From the NCBI RefSeq assembly GCF_039654945.1, contig NW_027361688.1, forward strand, positions 2,480,001-2,544,000: a DNA stretch of 64,000 nt, written 5' to 3'. The position numbers were made by a program, and so were the translations under genes. The notes below the pieces were generated by a model, which was not told where the DNA came from, searched no databases, and saw only the letters and a list, made by a program, of their open reading frames with translations. This document shows, piece after piece, positions 1 through 58,224 of the stretch (the first letter of the stretch is position 1; each line of letters opens with the position of its first letter). Source of the DNA: Dendrobates tinctorius. Lineage: Eukaryota.

Positions 1-1538
1 GCTGCCCGGCCTCATAATCCAGACATATCCTGAACCTACCATTGGAGATCTGGTGAGGAAACGGGGTCATTTTATTTCCATGTATGACTGAATACTGATT
101 ATTATTCCCCTGCCATTTATATAAACCCCAGGACTTGTTATTATTTCCGATGTATGACTGGCGCCCCCTCCTGTCTATACTGGGATAACACATCCCCACC
201 ATCCAGATATCTGACCCACTGATCTCCACATCCCAGTAATGTCGTCCTGATGTAAATCTCCTCCTGCTCATCACCTGAGGACAATCCCGGAATCTCTCTG
301 CTGTTTCTGGACGATTCTCTGTTATTTCTGTCCAGGTCGCAGTTTTCAGGTCATCCTATATAAGGAGATTATTACCAGCCGTATTTACATCCAGTAATAT
401 GTCTGCAGGATCCTGAACATAGAAGGTCACATTTATATCTCTTATCATAGCAGACAATGTGTGTGATATTTGTGAGATCAGCTCCGCACCCCGATCACCT
501 CCCTCATGTCCACCTGTGTCCTCATCACCTCCATCATGTCCTCCTGTGTCCTCATCACCTCCCTCATGTCCTCCTGTGTCCTCATCACCTCCATTATGTC
601 CACCTGTGTCATCACCTCCCTTTTCCTCAGGATCACACAAGTCACTGGTGTCTGGATCCTGTAAGACAGTGAGTGGATCCGTCATGTTACACAGCTCCTC
701 ATTGTGCCTCATCTTTCTGGACAGCTCGTCCTTTATTTCCAGCTTCTGGATCACATCAGACAGTGAGAGTGACACCTGCTCTTCCTGCCTGGAGATCTCA
801 CTCAGGATCCTTCTCTCCAGGTCGTCCACCCATCGCCTGATGTCTATAAACAGGGCAGTGACTCTCTCGGCTTTTCCAGTTGAGTTTTCTTGAGCTTTTC
901 TCCTGCGGTCCTCCAGACTCCGGACTCTTTCCTCGGTCTTCTTTCTCTTTGTGGTCAGTTTCTTCAGAACATTTCTCAGTTTCTTCTTCTTCTTCTCCGA
1001 GGCCTCATCCAGCATCTCCACCCGGTGTTCCCGATGTTCTCTGGCCAAACTGCAGGACACACAGATACAAACAGCATCCTCAGTGCAGTAATATTCCAGG
1101 ATCTTCTTATGGACAGAACATTTCTTGTTCTCCAGAGAAGTGGTGGGATCAGTGAGGACGTGTTCTGGTCCTTTACTGTGAACTCTCAGATGATTATCAC
1201 ACAGAGAAGCCTCGCAGTGTAGACAGGATCTAACAGCAGGTACAGGAGAGTGAATGCAGTAAGTGCAGCGGATCCCGGTGATCTCCTCCTGATGTAGCTG
1301 AGTAGACAGGAAATTCTCCACCACATTACAGAGCTATGTTCTTCTGTAGTGGAGGCCACTTCTGAAATGTTGCTCTACATTCAGGGCAGGAATAAACTCC
1401 AGACCCGTCCTGTGTATCCAGCACACGATCAATACAGACCCGGCAGAAGTTGTGTCCACATCTCAAGGTTACAGGATCTGTATAAATGTTCATGCAGATG
1501 GAGCAGAGCATCTCGTGTCTCAGATCAGCAGACGCCAT
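1..1538 (-). pseudogene. TRIM gene copy A (RING-Bbox-CC-B30.2, TRIM39/TRIM25-like), disrupted; the 3' end runs off the window
   Basis: ATG at 1538 (MASADLRHEMLCSIC...CGHNFCRVC...CPEC RING). An apparent 2-bp deletion at ~1326 gives NIAL*. B-boxes, coiled coil and acidic repeat lie in ORF 356-1324, then an in-frame TAG at 356-358 (NNLLI*DDLKT). PRY-SPRY stays open from 355 to 1 (GRHYWDVEI...VGMCYPS...RICLDYEAGQ). Confidence 0.9.
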
Positions 1539-4379
1539 GGCTTCCGAATTTATAAGAAAAGAAACGGGAAGTGTATGTTTTAAGGCGTGTTTCAGAACAT
1601 TATGACATTGCACAACCCGCAGCTGAGAGCTTCTAGTAGAGATGAGCAAATCTTTTGATACTCAAAATTCTTGCCTTCTCCAGTTTTTGACAGGAGGTTA
1701 GATTCATTGCTGCCTTATGATCCGATGGAGAGCCACAGTTCATAGTTCATTTGCACCAGGAAGGTCTCAGCCTATTTTCCTCATGCAGAGCCTACACTCT
1801 GCAAAAGATTTGTTGGTTGGCAATATGAAAAATAGTTCCCCCGCCCCCCAAAAAAAACGCATATAAGATTCATCACTACCACATTTACGACCTCGGCTAG
1901 AACATTAAGATTTTATTGAGTATGCTCCGTGAAGAGCAAAGGAGAAATGTGCAAAACACCTATTCAACCAGAAAGTGTCACTGTTAGAGGCTATAGTGTA
2001 CCACCAATGGCTGCAGGCTACACGACTGCTATGGAACCTGTGAGCAATGGGGGGGCCTGGTGTCAGCTCCCACAATGGGCTCCCCTCCGCCCGTCAGCGC
2101 CCACAAAGGGCCCCCTCTCAACATCCTCACTCCGCCCATCAGTGCAAGCACCGGACCCATCTGTCCGTCAGTGCGAGCAATGATCATGGAAGAGGGAGCA
2201 CCAGCTGTCACTTCCACCCCCATCATTCTGCCTCAGCGTCTGACGTTTCAGAGGATTGGGTGTGATGACATAATTGCAGTATGCCCGCTGTTCTGAGATG
2301 TGTGGCGCTTCACTCCACAGGTTCAGGAGACCATAAAATCAGGTAGAACGAGGCGAGAGGGTGCTATGTGCACGTGGAAAATATGCAAGGTTTTACAGTA
2401 CCAGCAAAGTGAATGAGATCCCTGAGGTCTCACGCACACACTGCTTAATTTTTCCTTGCAGACTAAATTCTTGCAGCCTAACGATTGTGGAAATATATGC
2501 AGCAAAAGTATTAAAAAAAATGGCAAAAATTTATTTTTTCGAAGCATTCTTCCTGCCAACACATTAGCATATGCAGCAGAATTTTCTCCTGCTAATCCTG
2601 AATGGGTGGACATAGCCTTAGTCCTTGTCCTGTGTGCCCATCATTCATTATAAGTCCTTGATAGCATCATAATGAATTTGGGGGTGGGTAAGATGTTATC
2701 AGGTACTGAGCATCCTCCACCATTCCCAATTCATTACAAGTCCCTGACAGCATCTTCTCCCACCTTACAATTCATTATAATGTGTCCTATGCACATTAAA
2801 ACTTTCTCTCCACATCCCATCATTGTCCTCTTCAACACATCTGTAGCGCTGATGTCCCTGCAAGCTGCCCCTCTCCCCCGGCAGAGACGCTGACTCACTG
2901 ACCACTCTGGCTCCTGTCCTGCGCTCCCACCTCCTTCCTCGTCAGCTGCTGCCCAGGATACACACACTGTGCGCATGTCCCTGTGCACTGTGCTTATGGT
3001 GCCCGCGCTCACTCCTTAAAATGGGAGCACGCCATCCTAATATATCCCCGCCAACGGCTGGGAGACACTTATTATTTAAGGCACCTCCACCTTTATGGAG
3101 GTGCCTGTGCAACATTGTTAGTCTGTTCACAAACACGCTTGCTAGTTTTCAGGACTTTGTCCACTGGATCTGCTAATGTCTGTCCATACCTAATTTCCTT
3201 GCAAGTACTTGCCTGGTCAGTCTGTATTTTCAACCGGACCCACAAGCACTTGCCATGCCAATCTGTATATCACCTGGACCTGTCTGCACCTGCTGTGCCA
3301 ATCTATATATCAATAGAGATATTGTAGAGGGGGCCGTGTGCAGGCTCATACAGTATATAAGGGGATTTCAGCATGCTTAATTCTGCTCAATATTAAGTGA
3401 TAATAATATACTGTATAATAATAATTATAATTGGAAGTATTATGTTTACTGGGGTATATGTGGGATTGCTTTGCATCTATCAGTGTTAGAATCGGGAGAA
3501 AATTCTCCAGAATTACATTTTTTTTTTCACTTTTCTATTGCTGCATTTCAAGAGCTGTAACTTTTTTATTTTTTCGCTGACAGTCATACGTGGGCTTGCT
3601 TTTTTAGAAATGAGTTGTATTTGTCAGTGGCATCATTTGGGGGAGATGTCAGTTATTAACAAACTCATTAACTCTTTATGGGAAAGAATATAAAGAAAAC
3701 AACAATTTTACCATAGTTTTTAAATTTTACACTATTCACCGTGTTCACTTCGTTTTGTGTCTCAGTACGATTAAGGTGACACCAAATGTCTAGTTTTATT
3801 TTATATTTTGCACCATAAATTCTGTTTGTGTCGCCATATTCTGAGAGACAAAAGTTCTGCCGTTTTCTGTCAGCGGAGCTGTATGACGTATGAAACAAGT
3901 TTTTTTTGCACAGAAAAATGTAGTTTTTATTGGTACAATTTTCTAGTAAATGCAGCTTTTGATCACATTTTATTATACTCTTTGGGAGGCAAAATATTAG
4001 GATATAATATCAATATTTTACCAATATTCCACCATATTAGTAGGATTTATATTGTTTGATTTCTAGTATATTGGGCAATGTACTTCCATGGAAGCCGGAA
4101 GTAACAGACGCTACTTGTGATCTAATGTAATGTTGGGGTTGTTGGTTCCGACAACATTAGGTGCAACTTGTGATGCTACAAAATGTTGGTAGTTTTGGCT
4201 CCACCTCCATTAGATGCTACTAGCTATGTTACAGATAGGGATGGGCAAACCCGAACAGTAAACTTCGAGGCTAATGACCCTCGGCTCCTGCTTTGCTGCG
4301 ATCGGGAGCCGAGTGTCATGCAGCTGTGCACCGAACTTCTCGCACAGAGAATAGGAGCACAGCTGCGGAGGAGACAGAG

Positions 4380-7320
4380 CAGTGGCGTAGCAACTGTTTG
4401 TGGCGCCCGGGGCGGTCGAAAAATTTGCCGCCCCTTTGGTCGTTGATAATTCGGAAGCATCCGAAGAGCCCACACTACACTCAAAGATCTAATTTTTAGT
4501 CTGCTACTAACTCTGCTATTATTTCTAAATTTCTAGACTTTCAACTTCTTGCAGTTCTCTATATATATGTATGTATTAGCTTGATGATGCTGGATGAAGA
4601 CCTAATGGCTTTTTTTAATAATAATTTTTAATAATGTGACAGAAAAAAAAACAGAAAGTACAAATTATTTTGGCGGACAGGGGGCGGACACTGACAGCTT
4701 GGGGGGCCCCTGTGCAAGAAATGTGTCCGGGCCCCCCTCCTTTTATGGCGTCAAAGCTACGTGTGTGTATATATATATATATATATATAGATAGATAGAT
4801 TATTGATATTATATAGCCACACACACACATACAGGTATATATTACATAGTCTCCTTTATTATGTATATTGCTGTCCCTTACACAGTGCCTTCTCTTGTTA
4901 TGTACAGTTCCGTCCCTTACATATTGGATTATATAGAGCCCTGTTTTTTATTACATACCGTCCTGTCTTGTTAGCTGTATAATGCAATGATGGCTGATGG
5001 AGCATGGGAAAGCTTCCTTTCTAATGGAGGAGCTGATGGACTGGTCGTCTGGTCACCGGCTCCTCGATCAGCAGTCATTTTATATCTAACAAGAGAGGGG
5101 ACCATGTAATAAAAGAGGGCGCTGTGAATAACAAAAATAACAAGAATACACTGTGTAAGAGACAGCACTATACATAACAGCAGAGGAAGCTATATAATAA
5201 GGGACGGCACCATATATAACTAGAGAGGATGGTAGGTAATAAGGGGCGGTGTTATACATAATAAAAGAGGAAACTATGTAACTAAGGATGGTGTTATACA
5301 GAATTAGTGAGTACACTATATACTAAGGGACTGTGTTAGACATAATAAACGATAATGTCTTCCTCCACCTCCCCCTGTTCCTAAGGCCATTATAAGTCCC
5401 CCTTCCTCCCATCCCAATCCCCCACACCCCTCATTGTCCTCCTCCCCTCGCATCCCATTATTGTCCTCTCCCCCACCTCCATAATTTTCTTCTCCACCAC
5501 TATCTTTGCTTTCTCCCCCACCACTCCCATCATTGCCCATTCCACCACCTCCATTATTTCCTCCTCCTCCACCACCCCCATTTATTGCCCTTTCCACCAC
5601 CACCATAATTGCATTCTCACCCACCACCCCATCATTGCCCTCTCGACCATCACCCCATCATTGTCTTCTCCCCATCACTGCCTTCTCCACCACCCCATCA
5701 CTGTGCCTTCTCCCCATCACTCCCATCATTGCCTGCTCCATCACCCCCATCATTGTCTGCTCCATCACCCCATCATTGCCTGCTCCATCACCCCATCATT
5801 GCCTGCTCCATCACCCCCATCATTGCCTGCTCCATCACCCCATCACTGCCTGCTCCATCACCCCATCACTGCCTGCTCCATCACCCCATCATTGCCTGCT
5901 CCATCACCCCCATCATTGCCTGCTCCATCACCCCCATCACTCCCCTCATTGCCTGCTCCATCACCCCATCATTGCCTGCTCCAATACCCCCATCATTGCC
6001 TGCTCCATCACCCCATCATTGTCTGCTCCATCACCCCCATCATTGCCTGCTCCATCACCCCATCACTGCCTTCTCCATCACCCCATCACTGCCTGCTCCA
6101 TCACCCCCATCATTGCCTGCTCCATCACCCCATCACTCCCATCATTGTCTGCTCCATCACCCCATCACTGCCTGCTCCATCACTCCCATAATTGTCTGCT
6201 CCATCACCCCCATCATTGCCTGCTCCATCACCCCCATCACTCCCCTCATTGCCTGCTCCATCACCCCCATCATTGCCTGCTCCATCACCCTATCACTGCC
6301 TTCTCCATCACCCCATCACTGCCTGCTCCATCACCCCCATCACTCCCCTCATTGCCTGCTCCATCACCCCATCACTGCCTTCTCCATCACCCCCATCATT
6401 GTCTGCTCCATCACCCCATAATTGCCTGCTCCATCACCCCATCATTGTCTGCTCCATCACTCCCCTCATTGCCTGCTCCATCACCCCATCATTGCCTGCT
6501 CCATCACCCCATCATTGCCTGCTCCATCACCCCATCACTGCCTGCTCCATCACCCCACCATTGCCTGCTCCATCACCCCCATCATTGCCTGCTCCATCAC
6601 CCCCATCATTGCCTGCTCCATCACCCCATCACTGCCTGCTCCATCACCCCATCACTGCCTGCTCCATCACCCCATCATTGCCTGCTCCATCACCCCATCA
6701 TTGTCTGCTCCATCACCCCATCATTGCCTGCTCCATCACCCCATCATTGCCTGCTCCATCACCCCCATCATTGCCTGCTCCATCACCCTATCATTGCCTG
6801 CTCCATCACCCCATCATTGTCTGCTCCATCACCCCCATCATTGTCTGCTCCATCACCCCATCACTCCCCTCATTGCCTGCTCCATCACCCCATCACTCCC
6901 ATCGTCTGCTCCATCACCCCATCACTGCCTGCTCCATCACCCCCATCATTGCCTGCTCCATCACCCCATCATTGCCTGCTCCATCATACACACAGACATA
7001 CACACAAGACACCACCTCTCTCCTCTCACCTGTCCGCAGCATCGCCCGCGCTTCCTCCCTCACACAGCAGCGGCCGCTGAATGATGACGTCATTCAGCGG
7101 CGCTCCTCTGTGTGAAACAGGAAGCGCGGCCTCCGGGCAGGAAGCAGGACGGACCCTTGCCGCTCCGCTCCTGCTATTCACTCTTGCAGGCAGCGGAGCT
7201 GCCGTGATCGCATCGCTCCCTGCCCGCCGCTGCACTGCACTGCAGGGTGGAATTGCTGCTTCCGCGCCGCCCCCACACACATGCCGCCTGGGGCGGACCG
7301 CCCCCCCCGCTACGCCAGTG
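4380..7320. mobile_element. Non-autonomous hAT-like element (inner) carrying a minisatellite
   Basis: TIRs cagtggcgtagc / gctacgccagtg; perfect 8-bp TSD agacagag (4372-4379, 7321-7328). Confidence 0.85.
5620..6985. repeat. C-rich minisatellite, 22-23 bp unit (catcattgcctgctccatcaccc)
   Basis: Directly visible tandem array; it explains the low-complexity P/H/S ORFs. Confidence 0.97.
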
Positions 7321-11913: not shown

Positions 11914-13965
11914 CTACGGTTTTGGTTCCTCACTGATCCCCCCTGAAAAAATATGTATAGAACCATCACATACATATATTGCAGCATGTAGAGGCTCGGA
12001 GAAGGCGGCAGTGAAGGTGTGTAAGTGTCTGATGGGGTCACAGAGCTCATAAAAGGACAACTGCCCGGCCTCATAATCCAGACATATCCTGAACCTATTA
12101 CTGGAGAACTGGTGACATAACGGGATCTCATTACTGTCATGTCTCGATGAGTACGGATTATTATACAGCAGCCCGGTCCCATAATCCAGACATATCCTGA
12201 CTCTATCACTGGAAGTTTGGTCAGGAATCTTGATCACTTTATTGCTATGTCTGACTGAATACTTATTATTATACCCCCGCCCTCCATATAAACACCAGGA
12301 CTTGTTATTATCTCCAATGTTTGACTGACATCTCCGGTCTACACTGGGGTAACACATCCCCACTCGCCACTCCCATGATCTACTGATCTTCACATCCCAG
12401 CAATGTCGTCCTGAGGTAAATCTCCTCCTGCTCATCACCTGATTGTACTGGAATCTCTCTGCTGTTTCTGGACAATTCTGTGTTATTTCTGTCCAGGTCG
12501 CAGTTTTCAGGTCACCGGATATAAGGAGATTATTACCAGCCGTGTTTACATCCAGTAATATGTCTGCAGGACCCTCCCCATAGATCTCTACTTTTCCAGT
12601 AGCCTTTACCTTCCCTCCAGCACCCACAGTCCTGACTATACCATCATCACCCCCATGTTTAATACCTGAGAATGACAAATCTTGCATGTGATGGAGCAGA
12701 GATTTGACCTTTGGGGGTTGTGGCCTCGTTTCTTTTGGTTTTGCAGGGGAGACAGTTTGTAGATAAGTCAGTATATCAGAGAAACCTGCATGTAATATCC
12801 CGGCAATCACATCCACATCTACACCATGAGTCTTATGTCCCCCTGTGTCCTCATCACCTCCATCATGTCCTCCTGTGTCCTCATCACCTCCATCATGTCC
12901 TCCTGTGTCCTCATCACCTCCATCATGTCCTCCTGTGTCCTCATCACCTCCATCTTGTCCCCCTGTGTCCTCATCACCTCCATCATGTCCTCCTGTGTCC
13001 TCATCACCTCCATCTTGTCCCCCTGTGTCCTCATCACCTTCCTCCTCCTCAGGATCACACAAGTCACCGGTGTCTGGTTCCTGTAGGACAGTCAGTGGAT
13101 CCGTCATGTTACACAGCTCCTCAATGTGTCTCATCTTCCTGGACAGCTCGTCCTTCTTTATTTCCAGCTGATGGATCAGAGCAGACAGTGACAGTGACAC
13201 TTGGTCTTCCCACCTGGAGATCTCACTCAGGACCTTCTTCTCCAGGTCGTCCACCCATCTCCTGATATCTATAAACAGGGCAGTGACGCTCTTGGCTTTT
13301 CCAGATGATTTTTCTTGAGCTTTTCTCCTGTGCTCCTCCAGACTCTGGACTCTTCTTTCAGTCTTTCCTCGGTTTTTGACCAGTTTCTGCAGAACATTTC
13401 TCAGTTTCTTCTTCTTCTTCTCAGACGCCTCATCCAGCATCTCCACCCGGTGTCCCCGATGTTTTCCAACCAAACTGCAGGAAGCACAGATACAAGCAGC
13501 GTCCTCAGTGCAGTAATATTCCAGGATCTTCTTATGGACAGAACATTTCCTGGTCTCCAGAGAAGTGCTGGGTTCTGTTAGGACGTGTTCTGGTCCTTTG
13601 CTGTGAACTCTCAAGTGTTTTTCACACAGAGAAGCCTCACACAGTAGACAGGATCTAACAGCAGGTACAGGAGAGTCCACACAGTAAGTGCAGCAGATCC
13701 CGGTGATCTCCTCCTGATGTGGCTGAGTAGACAGAAAACGTTCTGCGACGTTATTTAGAGCTATGTTCCTCTTCAGTGCAGGACGCTTCTTAAACTCCTC
13801 TCTACATTCAGGGCAGGAATAAAGTCTAGACCCTTCCTGAATATTCAGGACCTGATCAATACAGAACCGGCAGAAGTTGTGTCCACATTTCAGAGTCACA
13901 GGATCGGTATAAATGTTCAGACAGATGGAGCAGTCCAGTTCGTCACTCAGATCCATAGACGCCAT
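11914..13965 (-). CDS. TRIM E3 ubiquitin ligase copy B, intact, ~683 aa (RING, B-box1, B-box2, coiled coil, 7 acidic repeats, long linker, B30.2 with internal duplication)
   Basis: Uninterrupted ORF with C3HC4 RING CSIC..CGHNFC..C..CPEC, B-boxes, LLDVNTA PRY start and LDYEAGQLSFY SPRY motif. Start placed at GCCATGG (13965) by alignment with the paralogs. Confidence 0.93.
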   Translation of the reverse strand: MASMDLSDELDCSICLNIYTDPVTLKCGHNFCRFCIDQVLNIQEGSRLYSCPECREEFKKRPALKRNIALNNVAERFLSTQPHQEEITGICCTYCVDSPVPAVRSCLLCEASLCEKHLRVHSKGPEHVLTEPSTSLETRKCSVHKKILEYYCTEDAACICASCSLVGKHRGHRVEMLDEASEKKKKKLRNVLQKLVKNRGKTERRVQSLEEHRRKAQEKSSGKAKSVTALFIDIRRWVDDLEKKVLSEISRWEDQVSLSLSALIHQLEIKKDELSRKMRHIEELCNMTDPLTVLQEPDTGDLCDPEEEEGDEDTGGQDGGDEDTGGHDGGDEDTGGQDGGDEDTGGHDGGDEDTGGHDGGDEDTGGHDGGDEDTGGHKTHGVDVDVIAGILHAGFSDILTYLQTVSPAKPKETRPQPPKVKSLLHHMQDLSFSGIKHGGDDGIVRTVGAGGKVKATGKVEIYGEGPADILLDVNTAGNNLLISGDLKTATWTEITQNCPETAERFQYNQVMSRRRFTSGRHCWDVKISRSWEWRVGMCYPSVDRRCQSNIGDNNKSWCLYGGRGYNNKYSVRHSNKVIKIPDQTSSDRVRICLDYGTGLLYNNPYSSRHDSNEIPLCHQFSSNRFRICLDYEAGQLSFYELCDPIRHLHTFTAAFSEPLHAAIYVCDGSIHIFSGGISEEPKP
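12836..13040 (-). repeat. Coding 30-bp minisatellite (GGDEDTGGHD)x7 in TRIM copy B
   Basis: Tandem cctgtgtcctcatcacctccatcatgtcct units, in frame. Confidence 0.95.
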
Positions 13966-15197
13966 GGCTGAGAAAAGAAATGTGACCAATGTTACTGGCA
14001 GCAGGGTGTGCACCAGCATATTCGTTATCATTATAGACTTTGCTCTTTGGTTTCCTTCTGAGGGTAAACATGGCATCATGTTTTCCTTGTGGGCAGAGTT
14101 ATCACTTCCGTTTTATATCCTTAGATTCCAGATTGTGTAGTACTATTAGTGGTAGCATAACTACCGGGGGCCAGAGTCTGTGGTCACCCCAGGCCCCACT
14201 CAGAGGGGACCACCCCTAGCTACTACCACTCTTACCTGTATTGGCGTGCTCAATCCCTGCACTACCGCTCTGTTTTGTAGACTGCAGGATGGTTTAAGAC
14301 TGTGGTGTACAGAATGGCAGGGTGATGCACTGGGGAATGGCCATCATATGGTGTGGGGACTACTGTGGGGGCCATTATACACTGTGTGAGCTAATGCGGG
14401 GCCATTCACAAGTGTCGAGTACTGACTATAATGCTCATCAGAGCATTGACATCACTACCCAATGCCTGTAAATAGCTTTACTGCTATACACAGATGCCAT
14501 AGACAGAATCGGGGAATGTGGACTACTATATCGGACCTGCGTGGGGACATTTTGGATAACAATTGGGTGAACGAGGGACTGTCTATTGTCTTTATTTCTG
14601 TCTTTTCTATGTTTTTCAGTTATTCTTTTCAGAACTACATCGGTGGATTATTGTGGACCTGCATGGGATGTTTTTTGTTTTTCAATAAATTGATGAACGA
14701 TTGATAGTATGGGGGGAACCTTTATTCAAATAAAGTGTTTTTTTCTTTGTAAGTGTTTTATTTTTTATTACCGGGTTAGTAATGAGGGTTTAATAGACAC
14801 CCAGGGGTTGATGACAGCTGTGTTTTTTGACAAATCACACCTGTCATCAAACCACCATTACCATTAACTACCATTAATCTGATTGCCACCGCACCAGGGC
14901 AATTGGGAAGAGCCAGGCAAAGCGCTACAATTAATGCATCTAATGTTATGTGTCAATTGTGGGGTGGGCTGCAGGCTTGTATTTTTAGGCTGGGAAAGGC
15001 CCAATAACCAAAGACCTTCCAAGCCTGATAATATAAGCCCACCACTGTCTGTTTTACCTTGGCTGGTTATCAAAAATAAGTGGGACCCAACGTCTTTTCT
15101 TTCATTTATTAGGTTAATCCATGTTCAGTAAACTACACATGCACAGCACTAATTATCTCATGGATAGCTAGCTATCTACTCCATATTTATATATCTA

Positions 15198-27327: not shown

Positions 27328-28950
<1,623 letters not shown>

Positions 28951-29203: not shown

Positions 29204-30806
29204 CAGTGGGTATAGAAAGTATTCAGACCCTTTTACATTTTTCACTCTTTGTTTCATTTCAACCATTTGGTAAATTCAAAAAAGTTCATTTTTTCTCATT
29301 AATGTACACTCTGCACCACATCTTGACTGATGAAAAACAGAAATGTAGACAATTTTGCAAATTTATCAAAAAAGAAATATCACATGGTCATAAGTATTCA
29401 GCCCTTTTGCTCAGTGTTGAGTAGAAGCGCCTTTTGAGCTAGTACAGCCATGAGTCTTCTTGGGAATGATGCAACAATTTTTTCACCCCTGGATTTGGGG
29501 ATCCTCTGCCATTCTTCCTTGCAGATCCTCTGAAAGTTCCGCCAGGTTGGATGGTGAACATTGGTGGACAGCCATTTTCAGGTCTCTCCAGAGATGCTCA
29601 ATTGAGTTTAGGTCAGGGCTCTGGCTGGGTCAGTCAAGAATGGTCACAGAGTTGTTCTGAAGCCACTCCTTTGTTATTTTAGCTGTGTGCTTAGGGTCAT
29701 TGTCTTGTTGGAAGGTGAACTTTCGGCCAAGTCTGAGGTCCAGAGCACTCTGGAAGAGGTTTTCATCCAGGATATCTCTGTACTTGGCTGCATTCATGTT
29801 TCCTTCAATGACAACCAGTTGTCCTGTCCCTGCAGCTGAAAAACACCCCCATAACATGATGATGCCACCACCATAATTCATTGTTGGGATTGCATTGGGC
29901 AGGTGATGAGCAGTGCCTTGTTTTCTCCACACATACCGCTTAGAATTATCACCTAAAAGTTCTATCTTCGTCTCATCAGATCATTTCTCATAATCTGGGA
30001 GTCCTTCATGTGTTTTTTTTTTTGCAAACTCCATGCGGACTTTCATATGTCTTGCACTGGCTTCTGTAGGGCCACTCTGCCTTAAAGACCCGAATGGTGG
30101 AGGGCTGCAGTGATAGGTGACTTTGTTGAACTTTCTCCCATTTCCCTACTGCATCTCTGGAGCTCAGTGATCTTGGGGTTCTTCTTTACTTCTCTCACCA
30201 AGGCTCTTCTCCCACGATTGCTCAGTTTAGCTGGAAAGCCAGATTTAGGAAGACTTCTGGTGGTTCCAAACTTCTTCCATGTAAGGATTATGGAGGCCAG
30301 TGTGCTTTTAGGAACGTTGAGTACTACAAAAATTCTTTTGTAACCTTGGCCAGATCTGTGCCTTGCCACAATTCTGTCTCTGAGCTCCTTGGCCAGTTCC
30401 TTTGACCTCATGATTCTCATTTGGTCTGACATGCACTGTGAGCTGTGAGGTCTTATATAGACAGGTGTGCCCCTGTACAAATCAAGTCCTATCAGTTTAA
30501 CTAAGCACAGCTGGACTTCAATGAAGGAGTAGAACCATCTCAAGGAGGATCACAAGGAAATGGCAGCATGTGACTTAAATATGAGTGTGTGAGCAAAGGG
30601 TCTGAATACTTGTGACCATGTGATATTTCAATTTTTCTTTTTTTATAAATCTGCAACAATTTCTACATTTGTTTTTTTCAGTCAAGATGGGGGTGCAGAG
30701 TGTAAATTAATGAGAAAAAATGAACTCTTTTTGAATTTACCAAATGGCTGCAATAAAACAAAGAGTGAAAAATTTAAAGGGGTCTGAATACTTTCCGTAC
30801 CCACTG
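29204..30806 (-). mobile_element. Full-length but decayed Tc1 element #2
   Basis: ~200-bp TIRs cagtgggtatagaaagtattcagaccc / gggtctgaatactttccgtacccactg; transposase fragments MRSKELAKELRDRIV.. and FQQDNDPKH in separate frames. Confidence 0.92.
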
Positions 30807-36130: not shown

Positions 36131-36849
36131 TAAATAGAAACACTGACACCAGTTGTAGTAAAATAATTATATAATATATAAATATATATAATTATGAAAA
36201 TACCACTGAAAATCCTGTCTGCTGAAAGTAGTGGAACCACTAAAGTTAAAAACAACAGCCAAAACAACCGAAGGATCCAATGACCAGGAAAAACCAAGCA
36301 GGATGTACTTAATAAATTGCCTTAATTAATCAGTTGGCAATATTATATAAAAACAAATTAAGAACAATGTACACAATGGGACAACTTACTAAATTTAAAA
36401 AAAAAAATAGATCCAATTATATTATTTCTCATACATATACCTTAAGTCAGCAGTAAAAATTGAAAAAGTGTACATAAAATATAAAAATGTGCAAAGCAAT
36501 AATTTGTGACCAAAAGTGCTAGTGCTATAGTAATAAGAAAATTTCACAACATAGTGTCTCAGATATTAAACATCAAAATTGACACTGAATTCATAATATG
36601 CTACAATTTAAAGTGCATGGTGCATGTGCAAAAAGCAGCATGAGGAATGGTGACACACAATAAGATCTAATAAGGTAATACATAAACAGATACTGCTACC
36701 CAGAGTGCAAATATGCAATATAAGAATAAAATTAATGGGTCATATACCTTTAAATATTGCGTCTCTTTTAATGCACACCCCGACGCGCGTTTTGGAGCAC
36801 TTCCTTCATGATGATTCAGGTGAGATGTTCTGTATATATGTCATTAAAG

Positions 36850-37853
36850 TATGTCAGAGAAACCTGCATGTAATATCCTTGTAAATACATCCACATCTAC
36901 ATCATGTGTTATATTATGCACTCCCCCTGTGTCCTCCTCATCTCCCTCCTCCTCATGATCACACAAGTCAACTTTATTTCTCTAGGAAAGTCAGTGGATC
37001 CGTCATGTTACACAGCTCCTCAATGTGTCTCATCTCTCATCTTCTTGAACAGCTCGTCCTTCTTTATTTTCCAGCTTCTGGATCCCATCAGACAGTGACC
37101 GCGACACTTTCTCATCCTGCCTGGAGATCTCACTCTGGAACTTCATCTCCAGTTCATCCAGTCATCTCCTAATATCTATAAACTGGGCAGTGACTCTCGG
37201 CTTCTTCGGATGCTTTTTCTTGAGCTTTTCTCCTGTTCTCTTTCAGACTCTGGACTCTTTCCTCAGTTTTCCTTCTCCTTGAAGTCAGTTTTTGCAAAAA
37301 ATTTCTCAGATTCTTTTCTTTCTCTCTGAGGCCTCATCCAACATCTCCTCCTGGTGTCCCCGATGATGTGCGGCCAAACTGCAGAACACAGATACAAGCA
37401 GCGTCTTCAGTACAATAGTACTTTAAAAGTTCTCTCTGGATAGCGCATTTCCTTTTTCCCAGAGAAGTGCTGGGATCAGCGAGGACGTGTTCTGCTCCTT
37501 TGCTGTGAATTCCTAGGTGATTATCACACAGAGAAGCCTCACACAGCAGACAGGATCTAACAGCAGGTACAGGAGAGTGAATGCAATAAGTGCAGCGGAT
37601 CCTGGTGATCTCCGAAGTAGTTGGGATGTTCCTCCAAGTTACACAGAGTTGTGTTACTCGTCGGTACCGGCTGCTTTTGAAGCTGCGCTCTGCATTCAGG
37701 ACAGGAATAAACTCCAGACCCGTCCTGTGTATCCAGCACACAATCAATACAGTCCCGGCAGAAGTTGTGTCCACATCTCAGCATTACAGGATCTGTATAA
37801 AAGTACTTACAGATAGAGCAGTCCAGATCATATCTCAGATCAGCAGACACCAT
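36850..37853 (-). pseudogene. TRIM gene copy C, frameshifted and 3'-truncated (no B30.2)
   Basis: MVSADLRYDLDCSIC RING, then a frameshift after NTTLCNL. B-box and coiled-coil pieces lie in other frames, with the long-linker motif (HDVDVD..ILHAGFSD) at ~36855-36905. No PRY-SPRY sequence follows. Confidence 0.88.
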
Positions 37854-38325
37854 GGCTTCAGGATTTACAGGGAAAGGAAATGAAGGCGTATTTATAAGGC
37901 GTGTTCCCAAAAAAGTGACATTGCACATCCTAAGGCAGAGAGCTCTGTATTAACCCTATGATCTGCTAGATGAGAGCAAATGTCACGTCTATGATTTATA
38001 CTTATGGCTAAGAAGTTGAATTTTCGATTTTACATTCTGTCTACCTTTCCCCATTAGATTGCAAGATCCTGTGATCAGGATTGTTACTAGTTCTCTTCCT
38101 GATATTTATCTGTATTGCTGACAATTTTTATTTCTCTGCTATCCTCAATATACAATACTGTAATATACTCTATAGAAAAAAAAAGAATTGACCCACTACA
38201 TTGAATTCAGGTTTCTCAATCAAACTCATTATCTCTGACGTATAACATCCAGTCCCGTTGCCTCCAGTGTATAACATCCAGTCCCGTTGCTTCCGGTGTC
38301 TAACATCCAGTCCTATTCCCCCCCC

Positions 38326-43530: not shown

Positions 43531-45132
43531 TCACTTTGACATCTTTATAGAACTTTCCCATACAAATAATAGAGCATGAAGGGGCTCGGTGAAGACGGCA
43601 GTGAAGGTGTGTAATTGTCTGATGGGGTCACACAGCTCATAAAACGACAGCTGCCCGGCCTCATAATCCAGACATATCCTGAACCGATCACTGGAGATCT
43701 GGTGAGGTATCAGGATCAGTTTACGATCATGTATCACTGAATACTGATTATTATTCCCCGGCCCTTTATATAAACACCAGGACTTGTTATTTTCTCCAAT
43801 GAGTGACTGACGCATCCTCCTGTCTATACTGGGGTAACACATCCCCACATTCCACAGTCCTGATTTTCTGATCTCCACATCCCAGTAATGTCGTCCTGAG
43901 ATAAAACCCATCCTGCTCATCACCTGATAATAAAGGAATCTCTCTGCTGTTTCGGGACGATTCTGTCTTATTTCTGTCCAGGTCGCAGTTTTCAGGTCGT
44001 CTGATACAAGGACATTATTAGCAACCGTGTTTACGTCCAGTAATATGTCTGCAGGATCCTGTACATAGAAGGTCACATTTATATCTCTTATCATAGCAGA
44101 TAATGTGTGTGATATGTGTGAGATCAGATCCGCACCACGATCACCTCCATCATGTCCCCCTGTGTCCTCATCACCTCCATCATGTCCCCCTGTGTCCTCA
44201 TCATCTTCCTCCTCCTTAGGATCACACAAGTCACCGGTGTCTGGTTCCTGTAAGACAGTCAGTGGATCCGTCATGTTACACAGCTCCTCAATGTGCCTCA
44301 TCTTCCTGGACAGCTCGTCCTTCTTTATTTCCAGCTGACAGATCACATTGGACAGTGACAGTGACACCTGCTCTTCCTGCCTGGAGATCTCACTCAGGAC
44401 CTTCTTCTCCAGGTCCTCCAGACGTTTTCTGATGTATGTACACAGGGCAGTGACTCTCGCAGCTCCTCCAGATGCCTTTTCTAGAGCTTTTATCCTGTTC
44501 TCTTTCAGACACTTAACTCTTTCTTTGGTTTTCTTTCTCTTTGTGATCAGTTTCTGCAGAACATTTCTCAGATTTTTTTTCTTCTTCTCAGAGGCCTCCT
44601 CCAGCATCTCCACTCGATGTCCCCGATGTTCTCCGGCCAAACTGCAGGACACACAGATACAAGCAGCGTCCTCAGTACAATAGTACTTTAAAAGTTCTCT
44701 ATGGATGGAGCATTTCTTGTTTTCCAGAGAAGTGCTGGGATCAGTGAGGATGTGTTCTGGTCCTTTACTGTGAATTCTCAGGTGATTAACACACAGAGAA
44801 GCCTCGCAGTGTAGACAGGATCTAACAGCAGGTACCGGAGAGTGAATACAATAAGTGCAGCAGATCCCGGTGATCTCCTCCTGACGTGACTGAGTATTTA
44901 GGACATTTTCCACTAAATTACGCAGAGTTATGTTCCTCGTCAGTGCCGGACGCTTCTGAAACTCTTCTCTACATTCAGGACAGGAATAAACTCCAGACCC
45001 GTCCTGTGTATCCAGCACACGATCAATACAGACCCGGCAGAAGTTGTGTCCACATCTCAGCATTACAGGATCTGTATAAATGTTCTCACAGATGGAGCAG
45101 TCCAGCTTGTGTCTCAGATCAGAGGACGCCAT
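43531..45132 (-). CDS. TRIM E3 ubiquitin ligase copy D, intact, 533 aa (RING, B-box1, B-box2, coiled coil, 2 acidic repeats, short linker, B30.2)
   Basis: Uninterrupted ORF 43531-45135 with ATG at 45132. All RBCC and PRY-SPRY motifs are present (GRHYWDVEI, LDYEAGQLSFY, FTEPLH). Confidence 0.95.
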   Translation of the reverse strand: MASSDLRHKLDCSICENIYTDPVMLRCGHNFCRVCIDRVLDTQDGSGVYSCPECREEFQKRPALTRNITLRNLVENVLNTQSRQEEITGICCTYCIHSPVPAVRSCLHCEASLCVNHLRIHSKGPEHILTDPSTSLENKKCSIHRELLKYYCTEDAACICVSCSLAGEHRGHRVEMLEEASEKKKKNLRNVLQKLITKRKKTKERVKCLKENRIKALEKASGGAARVTALCTYIRKRLEDLEKKVLSEISRQEEQVSLSLSNVICQLEIKKDELSRKMRHIEELCNMTDPLTVLQEPDTGDLCDPKEEEDDEDTGGHDGGDEDTGGHDGGDRGADLISHISHTLSAMIRDINVTFYVQDPADILLDVNTVANNVLVSDDLKTATWTEIRQNRPETAERFLYYQVMSRMGFISGRHYWDVEIRKSGLWNVGMCYPSIDRRMRQSLIGENNKSWCLYKGPGNNNQYSVIHDRKLILIPHQISSDRFRICLDYEAGQLSFYELCDPIRQLHTFTAVFTEPLHALLFVWESSIKMSK

Positions 45133-45210
45133 CACTTCGGGTTTTACAGGAAAGGAAACATGAAGGCGTATTTATAAGGCGTGTTCCCAAAATAATGACA
45201 TTGCACAGCC
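45133..45210 (-). promoter_or_regulatory. Conserved proximal promoter block of the TRIM copies (TATA-like plus C/EBP-like motif); homologous blocks at 1539-1615, 37854-37930 and 56827-56905
   Basis: Minus strand TGTGCAATGTCA-N-GGGAACACGCCTTATAAATACGCCTTC lies ~40 nt upstream of the ATG and is conserved in copies C, D, E and partly A. Confidence 0.5.
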
Positions 45211-46659: not shown

Positions 46660-47610
46660 ATCATAGACTATTAGAGTTGTAAAGGACCTCAAGGGTCATC
46701 GTGTCTAACCAGCCACCCCCCACATGCAGTATTCAATAAACCATCTCAGATGTCTGTCCAGCCTCTGATTGATGTCTTCCTTTGAAGGAGAACTCACCAG
46801 TCACCACTTCTCGTGGCAACCTGTTCCACTCAATGATCACTTTCACTGTAAAAAAAAGTTTTCTCTAATATCTAATTTGTATCTTCTCCCTTTTGGGAGA
46901 AGATACAAGTTACAACTTAGCCTTCTATTTTACAAGCTAAACATTCCCAGATCCTCTAACTGTTCCTCGTAGGACATACTTTGCAGTCCGTTAACCTTCC
47001 TGGTCGCTCTTCTCTGAACTTGTTCCTATTTCTCAATGTCTTTTTTAAAATGTGTTGCCCAGAACTGGACACAGAATTCCAGATGTGGCCTAACCAAGTA
47101 GGAGTAGAGGAGGGTAATTACCTCATGTGATCTAGACTGTATGCTTCTCTTAATACATCATAGAACCGTTTGCCTTTTTTTGCTGCATCACGCTGTTGAC
47201 TCATGTGCAGTCTGTGATCTATTAGTATACCCAAGTCTTTTTCACACATACTGTTGCTTAGTTCTATTCCTCCCAATCTATAGATGTAATTTTTGTTTTT
47301 ATTGTCCAGATATAGAATCTTGCATTTCTCCCTGTAAAATATAATTATATTAGTTGCTGCCCATTGTTCAAGCTTATCTAGATTCTTCGGAATACTTTCT
47401 TTGTCTTCTCTAGTGTTAGCTATTTCTCCTAGCTTTGCATCGTCAGCAAATTTGATCAGTTTATCTTCAGTTCCTTTATCTAAATAATATATTATATACA
47501 TGTTGCACAACACTGGGGCCAGGACAGAGCCTTGTGGTACCCCACTTGAAATACTTTTCCAATAAAATGGGCAACCATGTATTACCAATCATAGAGTACG
47601 ATCACTGAGC
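46660..47610 (-). mobile_element. 5'-truncated CR1 LINE (reverse transcriptase C-terminal fragment)
   Basis: SGVPQGSVLAPVL...LIKFADDAKLG...EKDLGILID motifs; CR1-like 3' end (..tctatgat). Confidence 0.88.
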
Positions 47611-55067: not shown

Positions 55068-56826
55068 TCACTTTGACATCTTTACAGAACCTTCCCATAC
55101 CCATAACACAGCATGAAGGGGCTCGGAGAAGGTGGAGGTGAAGGTGTGTAAGTGTCTGATGGGGTCACACAACTCATAAAAGGACAACTGCCCGGCCTCA
55201 TAATCCAGACATATCCTGACTCCATCACTGGAGATTTGGTGAGGAAACGGGATCTCATTACTGTCATGTATCACTGAACACTGTATATTATTCACCAGCC
55301 CTTTACATAAATCCCAGGACTTGTTATTATTTCCAATGTATGACTGCCACCCCATCCAGTCTATACTGGGGTAACACATCCCCACCCTCCAATCTTCTGA
55401 CCCACTGATCTCCACATCCCAGTAATGTCGTCCTGAGGTAAATCTCACCTGATAATAACTCTGGAATCTCTGATGTTTCTGGACGATTCTGTGCTATTTT
55501 TGTCCAGGTCGCAGTTTTCAGGTCGTCTGATATAAGGAGATATTTATGAGCCGTATTTACATCCAGTAATATGTCTGCCAGATCCTTCACATGAATCCCT
55601 TCGGTTCCTGCAGCGATTACCCTTCTTTCACAAACCGCAGTCATGACTTCTACATCATCACGTTCTTGTTTTATACCTGATGTAAGTGAATATTTCACGT
55701 GACTGCAAAAAATTGGGGTACTAGAGGCACGTGTCATCACTTTTTTGCGTTTTTCGGGTACAAACGTCTGTAAATAAGTCATTACATTAGAGAAACCTGT
55801 ATGTAACATTCCTGTAATTATATTCACATCTACATCATGTGTCTTATGTCCTCCTGTGGTCTCATCACCGTCATCGTGTTCTACTGTTGCCTCATCACCT
55901 CCATTGTGTCCTCCTGTGGCCTCATCACCTCCATCACACAAGTCACCGGTGTCTGAATCCTGTAAGAAAGTCAGTGGATTCGTCATGTTACACAGCTCCT
56001 CAATGTGCCTCATCTTCTTGGACAGCTCGTCCTTCTTTACTTCCAGCTTCTTGATCATATCAGTCAATGAACATGACACCTGCTCTTCCTGCCTGGAGAT
56101 CTCACTCAGGACCTTCTTCTCCAGGTCGTCCACCCGTCTCCTGATGTCTATAAACAGGGCAGTGACTCGGCTTCTCCAGATGCTTTTTCTTGAGTTTTTC
56201 TCCTGTTCTCTTTCAGACTCTGGACTCTTTTCTTGGTTTTCTCTTTGTGATCAGTTTCTGCAGAACATTTCTCAGATTTTTTTTTCTTCATTTCAGAGGC
56301 CTCATCCAGCATCTCCACCCGGTGTCCCTGATGTTCTCCGGCCAAACTGCAGGACACACAGATGCAAGCAGAATCATCAGTGCAATAGTACTCTATGGAT
56401 GGAGCATTTCCTGTTTTCTAAGGAAATGCTAGGATCAGTGAGGACGTGTTCTGGTCCTTCGCTGTGAACTCTCAGGTGATTATCACACACAGAAGCCTCG
56501 CAGTATAGACAGGATCTAACAGCAGGTACAGGAGAGTGAATACAATAAGTGCAGCAGATCCCGGTGATCTCCTCCTCATGTGACCGAGTATTTAGGACAT
56601 TTTACACTAAATTACACAGAGCTATATTCCTCATCAGTGCCGGCCGCTTCTGAAACTCTTCTCTGCATTCAGGACAGGAATAAACTCCAGACCCGTCCGG
56701 TGTATCCAGCACACGATCAGTACAGACCCGGCAGAAGTTGTGTCCACATCTCAGGGTTACAGGATCTGTATAAGTGCTCAGGCAGATGGAGCAGTCCATC
56801 TCGTGTCTCAGATCAGCAGACGCCAT
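55068..56826 (-). pseudogene. TRIM gene copy E, full-length but disrupted (long-linker type)
   Basis: ATG at 56826 and intact RING, then TAA at 56602-56604 (GAA in copy D). Further small deletions and frameshifts near 56390, 56280, 56165 and 55445-55470. SPRY piece in ORF 55068-55448 ends VKMSK*. Confidence 0.9.
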
Positions 56827-57489
56827 TGCTTCAGGATTTACAGGAAAGCAAACTGAAGGCGTATTTATAAGGTGTGTTCCCCCCAAAAATGACATTGCAC
56901 ATCCTAAGGATGAAAATTAATAACCCTATGATCTGCCAGATGAGAGCAAGTGTCATGTCTATGATTTATATTTATGGTGAAGAAGCTGAAGTTTCCATTT
57001 TACATTCTGTCTACTGTAATAGACAGAAGCTGCACTGTTGGTTTAGAATCATCCAGCAACTATAGGGGTTAAAATGCTTATAGCAGACAGAGAGCGTTGT
57101 CTCAGCCTCAGGGGATACTGGTAAAATTATTATTTAGTCCTGGACATCCAAGATTAAGGTGCGTGCTGGAGATTCTTCTGTCAGACTGAGATCAGACAAG
57201 CTGTATAGACAAGTTCTTCCTGGGAAGCAAATGCTGTAATCATAAAAGCAGTCAGGACAGCCAGGAGCATCTTTATTACCTCAAGATAGAAGTGAGAGCT
57301 ATAGCACCGGACTCATCCCCCTACCCCCAACCTCACTGCATGAGCAATGTACAGTTCTGCTTAGGTCAAAACACTTATCTGTGAAGAGACTTTTATATAT
57401 GTTGATGAAGCATTGCATGAAGAGAAGTTAACAAAAAATGAAGCTGCACTCTGTAGTGCTAAAGCCTGTAAATACATTAGGTACAGAAA

Positions 57490-58140: not shown

Positions 58141-58224
58141 GATCCGTCCATAACCCAGACCATAATAAAAATAAGGTGTAAAAATAAAATTGACACTCAC
58201 CTTGTGTAGAATCACGGGGGTTCA

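What the first reader, a model, noticed from the sequence alone, without database searches (positions are those of the whole stretch)
12064..12275. In-frame 108-bp (36-aa) tandem duplication inside the SPRY domain of intact copy B
Seen: cataatccagacatatcctga occurs at 12072 and 12180. The protein reads YNNKYSVRHSNKVIKIPDQTSSDRVRICLDYGTGLL then YNNPYSSRHDSNEIPLCHQFSSNRFRICLDYEAGQL. Copies A, D and E have only one unit. The two units are well diverged yet stop-free, and the second resembles copy E (HDSNEIPFPHQISS), suggesting unequal crossover between paralogs. Established parallel: segmental duplications in the B30.2 variable regions of primate TRIM5alpha alter capsid specificity. Inference: an enlarged or novel ligand-binding surface.
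Basis: partly seen in the sequence, partly recalled or inferred. Interest (0 to 1): 0.72.

Follow-up and report, generated by a model that had tools for sequence, protein, structure and literature searches.

The report
Old in-frame duplication inside a frog TRIM
A poison-frog immune-type TRIM ubiquitin-ligase gene carries a real 36-amino-acid tandem duplication inside its target-binding SPRY domain; the same duplication is in two Ranitomeya species and the gene is still under selection, but what the extra piece does is unknown.

Summary
Window 12058-12273 (minus strand) is two head-to-tail 108-bp units, 73-75% identical and in frame. They lie inside the SPRY domain of an intact 721-aa RING/B-box/coiled-coil/PRY-SPRY ORF (copy B, 11914-14079). 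Paralogs D and E have one unit. Copy A is cut by the window edge exactly at the unit's end, so its count cannot be checked.

The window matches Dendrobates tinctorius. The same duplication sits at the same place in intact orthologous ORFs of Ranitomeya imitator and R. variabilis, and in none of the other 204 relatives retrieved. It therefore predates the Dendrobates/Ranitomeya split and is not an assembly artefact.

The gene is selectively maintained: whole-gene dN/dS is 0.40-0.54, and orthologue substitutions avoid family-conserved SPRY positions.

The E-likeness is a 2-nt, Dendrobates-only patch, and an AU test rejects unit 2 grouping with E. A plain intragenic duplication is not rejected.

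AlphaFold keeps a canonical PRY-SPRY sandwich with about 32 low-confidence extra residues, but the alignment gap sits at the same place, so this is not independent evidence. An enlarged binding surface remains plausible and untested.

This is a new variant of a known kind: the TRIM5alpha variable-loop duplications are the known parallel.

The parts
11914..13965 (-). Copy B coding sequence from the conserved Met (MASMDLS...) to the stop. The mechanical ORF extends 38 codons further, to 14079. Single uninterrupted exon.
   Evidence: ORF list. The orthologues start at MASMDLS. The exact 721-aa protein is present in NCBI/UniRef sources.
13804..13932 (-). RING finger (aa 50-92)
   Evidence: Pfam zf-C3HC4 and zf-RING_UBOX, E about 1e-10
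13438..13554 (-). B-box zinc finger (aa 176-214)
   Evidence: Pfam zf-B_box, 40.8 bits
13078..13365 (-). Coiled-coil region (aa 239-334)
   Evidence: Pfam TRIM_CC, 20.4 bits, below the curated cut-off of 30
12835..13039 (-). 30-bp tandem repeat, 6.8 copies, encoding the acidic decapeptide GDEDTGGHDG
   Evidence: TRF 96% matches. Copy number differs among paralogs and orthologues.
12574..12837 (-). Long linker (aa 415-502) between the repeat and PRY. An old linker type also found in single-unit TRIMs of other frogs.
   Evidence: blastp and linker-only homologue search
12418..12561 (-). PRY (aa 507-554)
   Evidence: Pfam PRY, 35.8 bits
12274..12408 (-). SPRY, part upstream of the duplication (aa 558-602)
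   Evidence: Pfam SPRY hit 558-638 = profile 1-80
12166..12273 (-). Unit 1 (aa 603-638), the diverged copy. Its first strand (YSVRH) is family-like; its LDYEAG motif reads LDYGTG here and xNYGSG in Ranitomeya.
12058..12165 (-). Unit 2 (aa 639-674), the consensus-like copy. It carries an intact RxRICLDYEAG strand that continues into SFYEL.
12142..12237 (-). The residues AlphaFold leaves at pLDDT below 50 or flanked by such residues (aa 615-646 = unit 1 residues 13-36 plus unit 2 residues 1-8): the predicted excursion from the sandwich
   Evidence: The MAFFT gap of single-unit homologues lies at aa 610-645, so this is not independent.
11944..12057 (-). SPRY, part downstream of the duplication (aa 675-712)
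   Evidence: Alignments; AlphaFold strands E174-212
12127..12132 (-). 'NE' codons (aa 650-651) shared with copy E only. Ranitomeya and the family consensus have KV.

Best explanation
Shown: copy B is an intact, single-exon class-IV TRIM gene (RING, B-box, coiled coil, PRY-SPRY) of Dendrobates tinctorius. Thirty-six codons of its SPRY domain were duplicated in tandem. In a single-unit paralog, one unit covers three consecutive beta-strands (YSVxH; KxIxL; RxRICLDY), the surface loop between the last two, and the EAGQL turn.

Shown: the duplication arose before Dendrobates and Ranitomeya diverged, became fixed, and has been carried since in an open reading frame under purifying selection.

Inferred: it arose as a simple intragenic tandem duplication by replication slippage or unequal exchange between alleles or sister chromatids. 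Unit 1 then diverged faster, while unit 2 stayed at, or was converted back to, the family consensus.

Inferred from conservation, from chain connectivity and, not independently, from AlphaFold: the canonical sandwich is completed by the first strand of unit 1 and the remaining strands of unit 2. About 36 residues (the rest of unit 1 plus the first strand of unit 2) are left as an excursion from the segment that by sequence position corresponds to variable region 3 of TRIM5alpha.

Inferred, least certain: this excursion changes or enlarges the recognition surface of an E3 ligase from a fast-evolving, probably innate-immune, frog TRIM cluster.
For: Reality and age:
- TRF and repeat calls confirm the two units.
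- The same two units sit at the same position in intact ORFs of R. imitator (696 aa, L001) and R. variabilis (701 aa, own stop codon, L002), from independent assemblies.
- Only these 3 of the 207 retrieved relatives have it.
- Unit 1 orthologues form a clade (support 100) and unit 2 orthologues form a clade (support 98).

Selection:
- Whole-gene dN/dS is 0.53, 0.40 and 0.54, with Fisher p of 5e-4, 2e-7 and 9e-3.
- On the D. tinctorius branch alone there are 20 non-synonymous and 13 synonymous changes, against a neutral ratio of about 3.5:1.
- In simulation, only 0.2% of neutral runs keep the ORF open after 155 substitutions.
- Within PRY-SPRY, the orthologues differ at 5 of 60 positions that are at least 90% conserved in the family, against 19 of 72 variable positions (p=0.012). 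The extra segment changes at 11 of 39 positions, mostly conservatively: V/L/I, D/N, T/S, Y/F.

Not spliced out: no GT...AG pair lies at 108-nt spacing. The NCBI protein models of the two Ranitomeya species shown here keep both units, and the exact two-unit 721-aa protein of the window is on record in NCBI/UniRef sources.

Fold:
- AlphaFold of B gives pLDDT 82.5, with all canonical strands and aa 615-646 below 50.
- Foldseek TM-scores (normalised to the target) are 0.82-0.88 to TRIM14, TRIM25 and TRIM7 PRYSPRY.
- The D baseline has pLDDT 92.2 and defines the three strands of a unit.

Origin: unit 1 + unit 2 as one clade is not rejected (p=0.31 and 0.15), and both flanks group with the orthologues.
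Against: - The extra unit alone has too few sites to show selection (dN/dS 0.47-0.66, not significant).
- PRY-SPRY taken alone has dN/dS of about 0.6-0.8, not significantly below 1.
- The AlphaFold topology follows the MAFFT gap placement. Low pLDDT there may only reflect an alignment depth of 2.
- If the excursion leaves from the tight turn after the first strand, it may point away from the classical binding face.
- The unit tree is a polytomy, and unit 1 is more diverged from every sequence, also at synonymous sites (pS 0.25-0.29 against 0.18 among paralogs). A paralog-derived unit is therefore not excluded.
- D. tinctorius B has Y560C in the nearly invariant GRHYW motif and a frameshifted C-terminal tail.
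- No expression data could be examined.
Confidence: 0.6

Rival explanations
1. Tolerated passenger. The duplication is real, old and in a working gene, but the extra 36 residues are a floppy loop with no role of their own. Selection keeps the frame and the scaffold only.
For: AlphaFold pLDDT is below 50 over aa 615-646. The extra segment changes as often as variable surface positions, 28% against 26%. Its dN/dS is not distinguishable from 1. The LDYEAG motif of unit 1 has decayed in Ranitomeya.
Against: No indel or stop has arisen in 108 nt in three species. Replacements keep the alternating hydrophobic strand pattern (RVRICLDY against RLRLCxNY). The first 11 residues of unit 2 are identical in D. 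tinctorius and R. imitator, and R. variabilis differs only at the first residue, Y to F. Low pLDDT is expected at an alignment depth of 2.
Confidence: 0.3
2. One reading: unequal crossover between two already diverged paralogs, one of them E-like, created a chimeric gene with one unit from each.
For: Unit 2 is closer to other paralogs (82-92%) than to unit 1 (73-77%). Synonymous divergence of unit 1 from everything is high. The free tree does not join unit 1 and unit 2. The NE codons are shared with E.
Against: Unit 2 + E as a clade is rejected (p=0.015). NE is absent from both Ranitomeya orthologues, so it is younger than the duplication. Both flanks of B group only with B orthologues (support 97 and 76). 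One clade of all six units is not rejected. No sampled paralog is a specific relative of unit 1.
Confidence: 0.15
3. Decaying gene. The duplication broke the SPRY domain, and copy B is a young pseudogene or an RBCC-only protein with a dead C-terminus.
For: The Pfam SPRY match is truncated at 80/121. PRY-SPRY-only dN/dS is 0.6-0.8. D. tinctorius has Y560C in GRHYW, R536C and a tail frameshift. Neighbours A, C and E are broken.
Against: There are three intact ORFs after dS of about 0.13-0.15, where the neutral expectation is 0.2%. Substitutions avoid conserved SPRY positions (p=0.012). The canonical fold is predicted with pLDDT above 90 outside the insert.
Confidence: 0.07
4. Assembly artefact: a mis-joined or falsely expanded repeat.
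For: None found.
Against: The units differ at 27% of positions, so they are not a collapsed or expanded identical repeat. The same structure occurs in assemblies of two other species.
Confidence: 0.01

Closest known systems
[quoted passage not shown]
   Same: An in-frame tandem duplication inside the B30.2/PRY-SPRY recognition domain of a RING/B-box/coiled-coil E3 ligase from a fast-evolving gene cluster, lineage-specific and fixed. In TRIM5alpha such variants change which capsids are recognised (PMC3264904; PMC11281341).
   Different: Here the unit is longer (36 aa) and is not confined to a loop. It copies three core beta-strands plus the loop and the LDYEAG turn. The host is an amphibian, the ligand is unknown, and no functional effect has been shown. 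The correspondence to V3 rests on my own alignment from memory plus the statement that VIIC 435-438 lies in V3 (PMC4945854).
Teleost finTRIM and bloodthirsty-like (btr) expansions
   Same: Large lineage-specific clusters of closely related TRIM genes with PRY-SPRY, diversified mainly in the B30.2 loops. TRIM16/25 and TRIM39 are their nearest mammalian relatives (PMC2657112).
   Different: finTRIMs are reported to be absent from tetrapods (same paper). The frog cluster is a separate expansion, and no internal strand duplication came up in the parts of that paper I searched.
TRIM14 and TRIM25 PRY-SPRY domains (PDB 6JBM, 6FLM, 9IUN, 4B8E)
   Same: Best solved relatives by sequence (TRIM14 E=2.9e-25) and by fold (TM 0.82-0.85, rmsd 1.5-2.0). 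NCBI names the orthologues 'TRIM25-like'.
   Different: About 24-28% identity. Orthology to TRIM25 or TRIM14 was not tested and is unlikely for a member of a multi-copy, frog-specific cluster. Among the homologues retrieved here, none carries a duplicated unit; the solved structures themselves were not screened for one.

Membership tests
Class-IV TRIM (RBCC + PRY-SPRY) E3 ligases | N-terminal RING finger | tested here: met
   Pfam zf-C3HC4 40.5 bits, zf-RING_UBOX 42 bits, aa 50-92
Class-IV TRIM (RBCC + PRY-SPRY) E3 ligases | B-box zinc finger | tested here: met
   Pfam zf-B_box 40.8 bits, aa 176-214
Class-IV TRIM (RBCC + PRY-SPRY) E3 ligases | Coiled coil after the B-box | tested here: inconclusive
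   TRIM_CC 20.4 bits, below the cut-off of 30. The region aligns well with annotated TRIM paralogs.
Class-IV TRIM (RBCC + PRY-SPRY) E3 ligases | C-terminal PRY + SPRY (B30.2) beta-sandwich | tested here: met
   PRY 35.8 bits and SPRY 53 bits, both above cut-off, with the SPRY match interrupted at profile position 80. The AlphaFold model matches TRIM14/25/7/21 PRYSPRY at TM 0.82-0.88.
Class-IV TRIM (RBCC + PRY-SPRY) E3 ligases | E3 ubiquitin-ligase activity | not testable with these tools
   Needs biochemistry
TRIM5alpha-type recognition-loop length variants | In-frame tandem duplication within B30.2 | tested here: met
TRIM5alpha-type recognition-loop length variants | The duplicated segment lies in a surface variable loop of the binding face | tested here: inconclusive
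   The unit includes the loop before the RxRICLDY strand, but also three strands. Where the surplus residues leave the sandwich depends on an alignment-driven model.
TRIM5alpha-type recognition-loop length variants | The variant changes ligand or virus specificity | not testable with these tools
   No ligand known; needs binding or restriction assays
True TRIM25 orthologue | One-to-one orthology and synteny with vertebrate TRIM25 | not tested
   'TRIM25-like' is an automatic NCBI name. The gene is one of at least five tandem paralogs in 64 kb and of thousands of frog relatives (2499 hits).

The most novel reading that the evidence does not exclude
The surplus three-strand segment is not a floppy loop but an ordered extra beta-hairpin or meander grafted onto the B30.2 sandwich. 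On this reading a fold-expanding internal strand duplication created a new recognition surface that has been kept by selection in Dendrobates and Ranitomeya since before the two genera split. It would be a natural example of a beta-sandwich recognition domain innovating by duplicating core strands rather than only lengthening loops.
Probability: 0.2. Interest if true: 0.6.

Novelty: new variant of a known kind. Interest (0 to 1): 0.42.

Why it matters
B30.2/PRY-SPRY domains are the target-recognition modules of many innate-immune TRIMs. In primate TRIM5alpha, small tandem duplications in their variable regions change which viruses are restricted. This frog gene shows a larger event of the same type: three strands and a loop were copied, and the result has been tolerated and kept in frame across a genus-level split.

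That makes it a natural test case for two questions: how much insertion a B30.2 sandwich can absorb, and whether such events create new specificities in amphibian immunity, where TRIM clusters are huge and almost unstudied.

If the extra unit proves to be a passive loop, the finding is a well-dated curiosity in a fast-evolving gene family.

Tried and rejected
- Domain-only homologue search for short fragments or transcript-derived pieces carrying the duplication: 65 hits, all single-unit, so no expression evidence was gained.
- Linker-only search for B-type orthologues in other frogs: long-linker relatives turned up in Phyllobates, Anomaloglossus, Rhinoderma, Hyla, Dendropsophus and Engystomops, all with one unit. 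The Phyllobates protein P0193 is only 67% identical to B, so it is probably not the orthologue. The lower age bound stays open.
- Unit trees with 15 and 17 sequences: a polytomy, so the origin is not resolved.
- Per-unit dN/dS: too few sites.
- AlphaFold as a test of which unit builds the core: not independent, because MAFFT placed the 36-column gap where the low-confidence stretch falls.
- Song et al. 2005 (PMC1091705) is not held. Two reviews were used instead.
- The 1.84-billion-protein HMMER search was not run, since the word search already gave orthologues. The bacterial/archaeal, viral and metagenome collections were not searched, as they are irrelevant to a frog gene.
- Nothing in the window looked human.
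Full report
**1. What is in the sequence**

The finding lies on the minus strand inside a 721-codon ORF, 14079..11914. Pfam finds RING, B-box, a weak TRIM coiled coil, PRY and SPRY, so this is a class-IV TRIM gene in one exon.

Five copies of this gene family lie in the window, all on the minus strand:
- A (about 1646..1) is cut by the window edge and has an in-frame stop.
- B is intact.
- C (about 37955..36847) is an N-terminal fragment.
- D (45135..43531) is intact, 534 aa.
- E (about 56829..55071) is frameshifted.

Evidence for the repeat:
- Tandem Repeats Finder reports 12063-12274, period 108, 2.0 copies, 75% matches.
- The repeat finder gives two 108-nt copies at 73% identity.
- The B/D/E/A alignment shows one clean 108-nt surplus in B.

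In protein register, unit 1 is 12273..12166 (aa 603-638) and unit 2 is 12165..12058 (aa 639-674). The Pfam SPRY match in B ends at profile position 80 of 121, at the last residue of unit 1. In D it runs 1-116.

Copy A ends at window base 1, exactly at the end of its unit, so its unit count is not verifiable.

**2. Where the window comes from, and the key comparison**

The exact 721-aa protein is in the public collection on a 57,530,419-bp contig. A Dendrobates tinctorius TRIM (P0110) sits on a contig of the same length, JAYMGB010000008.1 of GCA_039654945.1. The window is therefore D. tinctorius, not human.

- The best full-length relative is a Ranitomeya imitator protein, P0029 (XP_069619207.1, 696 aa). 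It has the same two units at the same place. Its gene is an uninterrupted ORF in L001.
- The cluster of P0029 also holds a R. variabilis model, P0186. The first 701 codons of this model are an uninterrupted ORF with its own stop (L002 3001-5106), and they again hold both units. The NCBI model merely fuses it to the next TRIM gene.
- Among all 207 relatives retrieved in three searches, only these three proteins have two LDYxxG-type motifs 36 residues apart.

The duplication is therefore real, older than the Dendrobates/Ranitomeya split, and restricted to this orthologue group as far as annotated proteins show. Long-linker relatives in Phyllobates, Anomaloglossus, Rhinoderma and hylids have one unit. 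The Phyllobates one is only 67% identical to B, so it gives no firm lower bound on the age.

**3. Is the gene alive?**

- Nei-Gojobori dN/dS over about 670 aligned codons is 0.53 (Dt-Ri), 0.40 (Dt-Rv) and 0.54 (Ri-Rv). Fisher p is 5e-4, 2e-7 and 9e-3.
- Polarising changes with six paralog outgroups gives 20 non-synonymous and 13 synonymous changes on the D. tinctorius branch, and 17 and 10 on the Ranitomeya stem. The site ratio is about 3.5:1, so both lineages are constrained.
- Random substitution of the R. imitator CDS at the observed divergence (155 changes) leaves it open in 0.2% of 20,000 trials.
- The signal comes mostly from RBCC and the linker. PRY-SPRY alone has dN/dS of about 0.6-0.8, and each unit alone has too few sites.
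- A separate test addresses the domain. Among the three orthologues, 5 of 60 positions that are at least 90% conserved across 106 frog PRY-SPRY domains differ, against 19 of 72 variable positions (Fisher p=0.012). This indicates that the scaffold is still selected.
- The 39 positions without homologues change at 28%, the same rate as variable surface positions, and mostly conservatively.
- No GT...AG pair lies at 108-nt spacing, so no canonical intron could remove exactly one unit.

Caveats for the D. tinctorius copy:
- It has Y560C in the nearly invariant GRHYW motif, and R536C.
- Its C-terminal tail is frameshifted relative to Ranitomeya, after the last strand, at a T6/G6 run. The Ranitomeya-like tail is readable in another frame.

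**4. Origin**

- Unit 1 orthologues are 86-95% identical to each other and unit 2 orthologues 92-97%. Unit 1 against unit 2 is 73% within D. tinctorius and R. imitator, and 69-77% between units of different species.
- Unit 2, especially in Ranitomeya, equals the family consensus and is up to 92% identical to neighbouring paralogs. Unit 1 sits on a long branch.
- The unit tree resolves only the two orthologue clades (support 100 and 98). Everything else is a polytomy.
- AU tests do not reject all six units as one clade (p=0.31 with 15 sequences, 0.15 with 17). They do reject D. tinctorius unit 2 + copy E (p=0.015).
- Trees of the upstream (297 nt) and downstream (about 100 nt) flanks both put B with its orthologues, apart from all sampled paralogs (support 97 and 76).
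- The E-like 'SNE' is two nucleotides, present only in D. tinctorius. Ranitomeya has the consensus SKV. The variant also recurs in unrelated frog paralogs. It is best read as a later short conversion tract or a parallel change.
- Synonymous divergence between the units (pS 0.29) exceeds both the orthologue dS (0.13-0.15) and the mean between paralogs (0.18). This fits either an old event with unit 1 escaping the homogenisation that keeps the other copies alike, or a unit from an unsampled paralog. Five to seven synonymous differences cannot decide between these.

**5. Structure**

- AlphaFold2 of D's PRY-SPRY (106-sequence alignment) gives pLDDT 92.2. It shows that one unit covers strands E115-119 (YSVIH), E122-125 and E134-140 (RFRICLD), the loop 126-133, and the turn before SFYEL.
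- The B domain (108-sequence alignment) gives pLDDT 82.5 and pTM 0.78, with every canonical strand present. The first strand comes from unit 1 (E109-113), and the second and third come from unit 2 (E150-154, E163-169). Domain residues 116-142 and 145-147 are below pLDDT 50.
- Foldseek places the model with TRIM14, TRIM25, TRIM7 and TRIM21 PRYSPRY and BTN3 B30.2 structures (TM to target 0.80-0.88). By sequence the nearest solved structure is TRIM14.
- MAFFT put the 36-column gap of all single-unit homologues between YSV of unit 1 and RH of unit 2. The model's topology and its low-confidence stretch therefore follow the alignment and are not an independent result.
- Conservation independently points the same way. 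Unit 1 keeps the family's YSVxH, while unit 2 has YSSRH. Unit 2 keeps KVIPLPHQISSDRFRICLDYEAG, while unit 1 has lost the EAG turn and, in Ranitomeya, the LD.
- Chain connectivity agrees. The strand before the units is contiguous with unit 1, and SFYEL is contiguous with unit 2.
- Whether the surplus is ordered, and on which side of the sandwich it emerges, could not be determined.

**6. Comparison with what is known**

- TRIM5alpha specificity resides in four variable loops of B30.2 (PMC5809731).
- A 20-aa duplication in V1 of African green monkey TRIM5alpha determines restriction of SIVmac239 (PMC3264904).
- The motif VIIC 435-438 lies in V3 (PMC4945854). From my memory of the TRIM5alpha sequence, this motif is just upstream of the RVGVFLDYEA strand. 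That would make the loop inside the frog unit the positional counterpart of V3. This mapping was not tested with a tool.
- Fish finTRIMs show the same pattern of cluster expansion with variation concentrated in B30.2 loops, and they are reported as absent from tetrapods (PMC2657112).
- I found no paper on this frog gene or on a strand-level duplication in a SPRY domain. The library is partial.

**7. Verdict**

It is a new variant of a known kind of B30.2 length variation, of moderate interest.

Noticed in passing
window 12835-13039 (minus strand, inside copy B): A 30-bp tandem repeat (6.8 copies, 96% matches) encodes the acidic decapeptide GDEDTGGHDG between the coiled coil and the linker. Copy number differs widely among paralogs and orthologues: about 2 in D, about 8 in R. 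imitator, about 17 in D. tinctorius P0110.
   Followed up: partly
window 11914-11975 (minus strand): The C-terminal tail of D. tinctorius B (ending ...SGGISEEPKP) is frameshifted relative to both Ranitomeya orthologues (ending ...WRNQNH..LPRNW). The Ranitomeya-like tail is readable in another frame after a T6/G6 homopolymer run. This could be a real 1-nt indel or a homopolymer assembly error. It lies after the last beta-strand.
   Followed up: partly
window 12400-12402 (aa 560) and 12472-12474 (aa 536): D. tinctorius-specific Y560C in the nearly invariant GRHYW motif of SPRY, and R536C in QNRPET. With P655C, these are three replacements to cysteine on the D. tinctorius branch.
   Followed up: partly
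window 1-1646, 36847-37955, 55071-56829 (all minus strand): The neighbouring paralogs are damaged. A has an in-frame stop in PRY and is cut by the window edge. C is an N-terminal fragment. E is frameshifted in PRY/SPRY and has the same long linker type as B. Only B and D are intact.
   Followed up: partly
window 27665-28741 (+), 31702-32724 (-), 30082-30543 (-): Tc1/mariner (Sleeping Beauty-type) transposase ORFs. Two are full length (358 and 340 aa, with HTH_SB, HTH_Tnp_Tc3_2 and DDE_3 domains) and one is an N-terminal fragment.
   Followed up: partly
window 47118-47588 (-): A 156-aa ORF with a reverse-transcriptase (RVT_1) fragment, probably a retroelement remnant, between copies D and E.
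   Followed up: partly
window 5506-7115 (+) and 58212-59322 (-): Long ORFs open in several overlapping frames with highly repetitive Pro/Ser/His/Cys-rich translations. They look like tandem or satellite repeats rather than genes.
   Followed up: no
L002 3001-35809 (R. variabilis): The NCBI model XP_077119120.1 (1262 aa) fuses the duplication-bearing orthologue to a TRIM gene about 30 kb downstream. The orthologue has its own stop at L002 5104-5106. Many of the frog 'uncharacterized proteins' of more than 1000 aa carry two or three PRY-SPRY domains and may be similar fusions of tandem genes.
   Followed up: partly
L007 1-1194 (Phyllobates terribilis): A neighbouring single-unit paralog has FSNPCSVRH at the start of its unit. 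This resembles the unusual (Y/F)NNPYSSRH start of unit 2, so the 'NP' feature is not unique to the duplicated gene.
   Followed up: no
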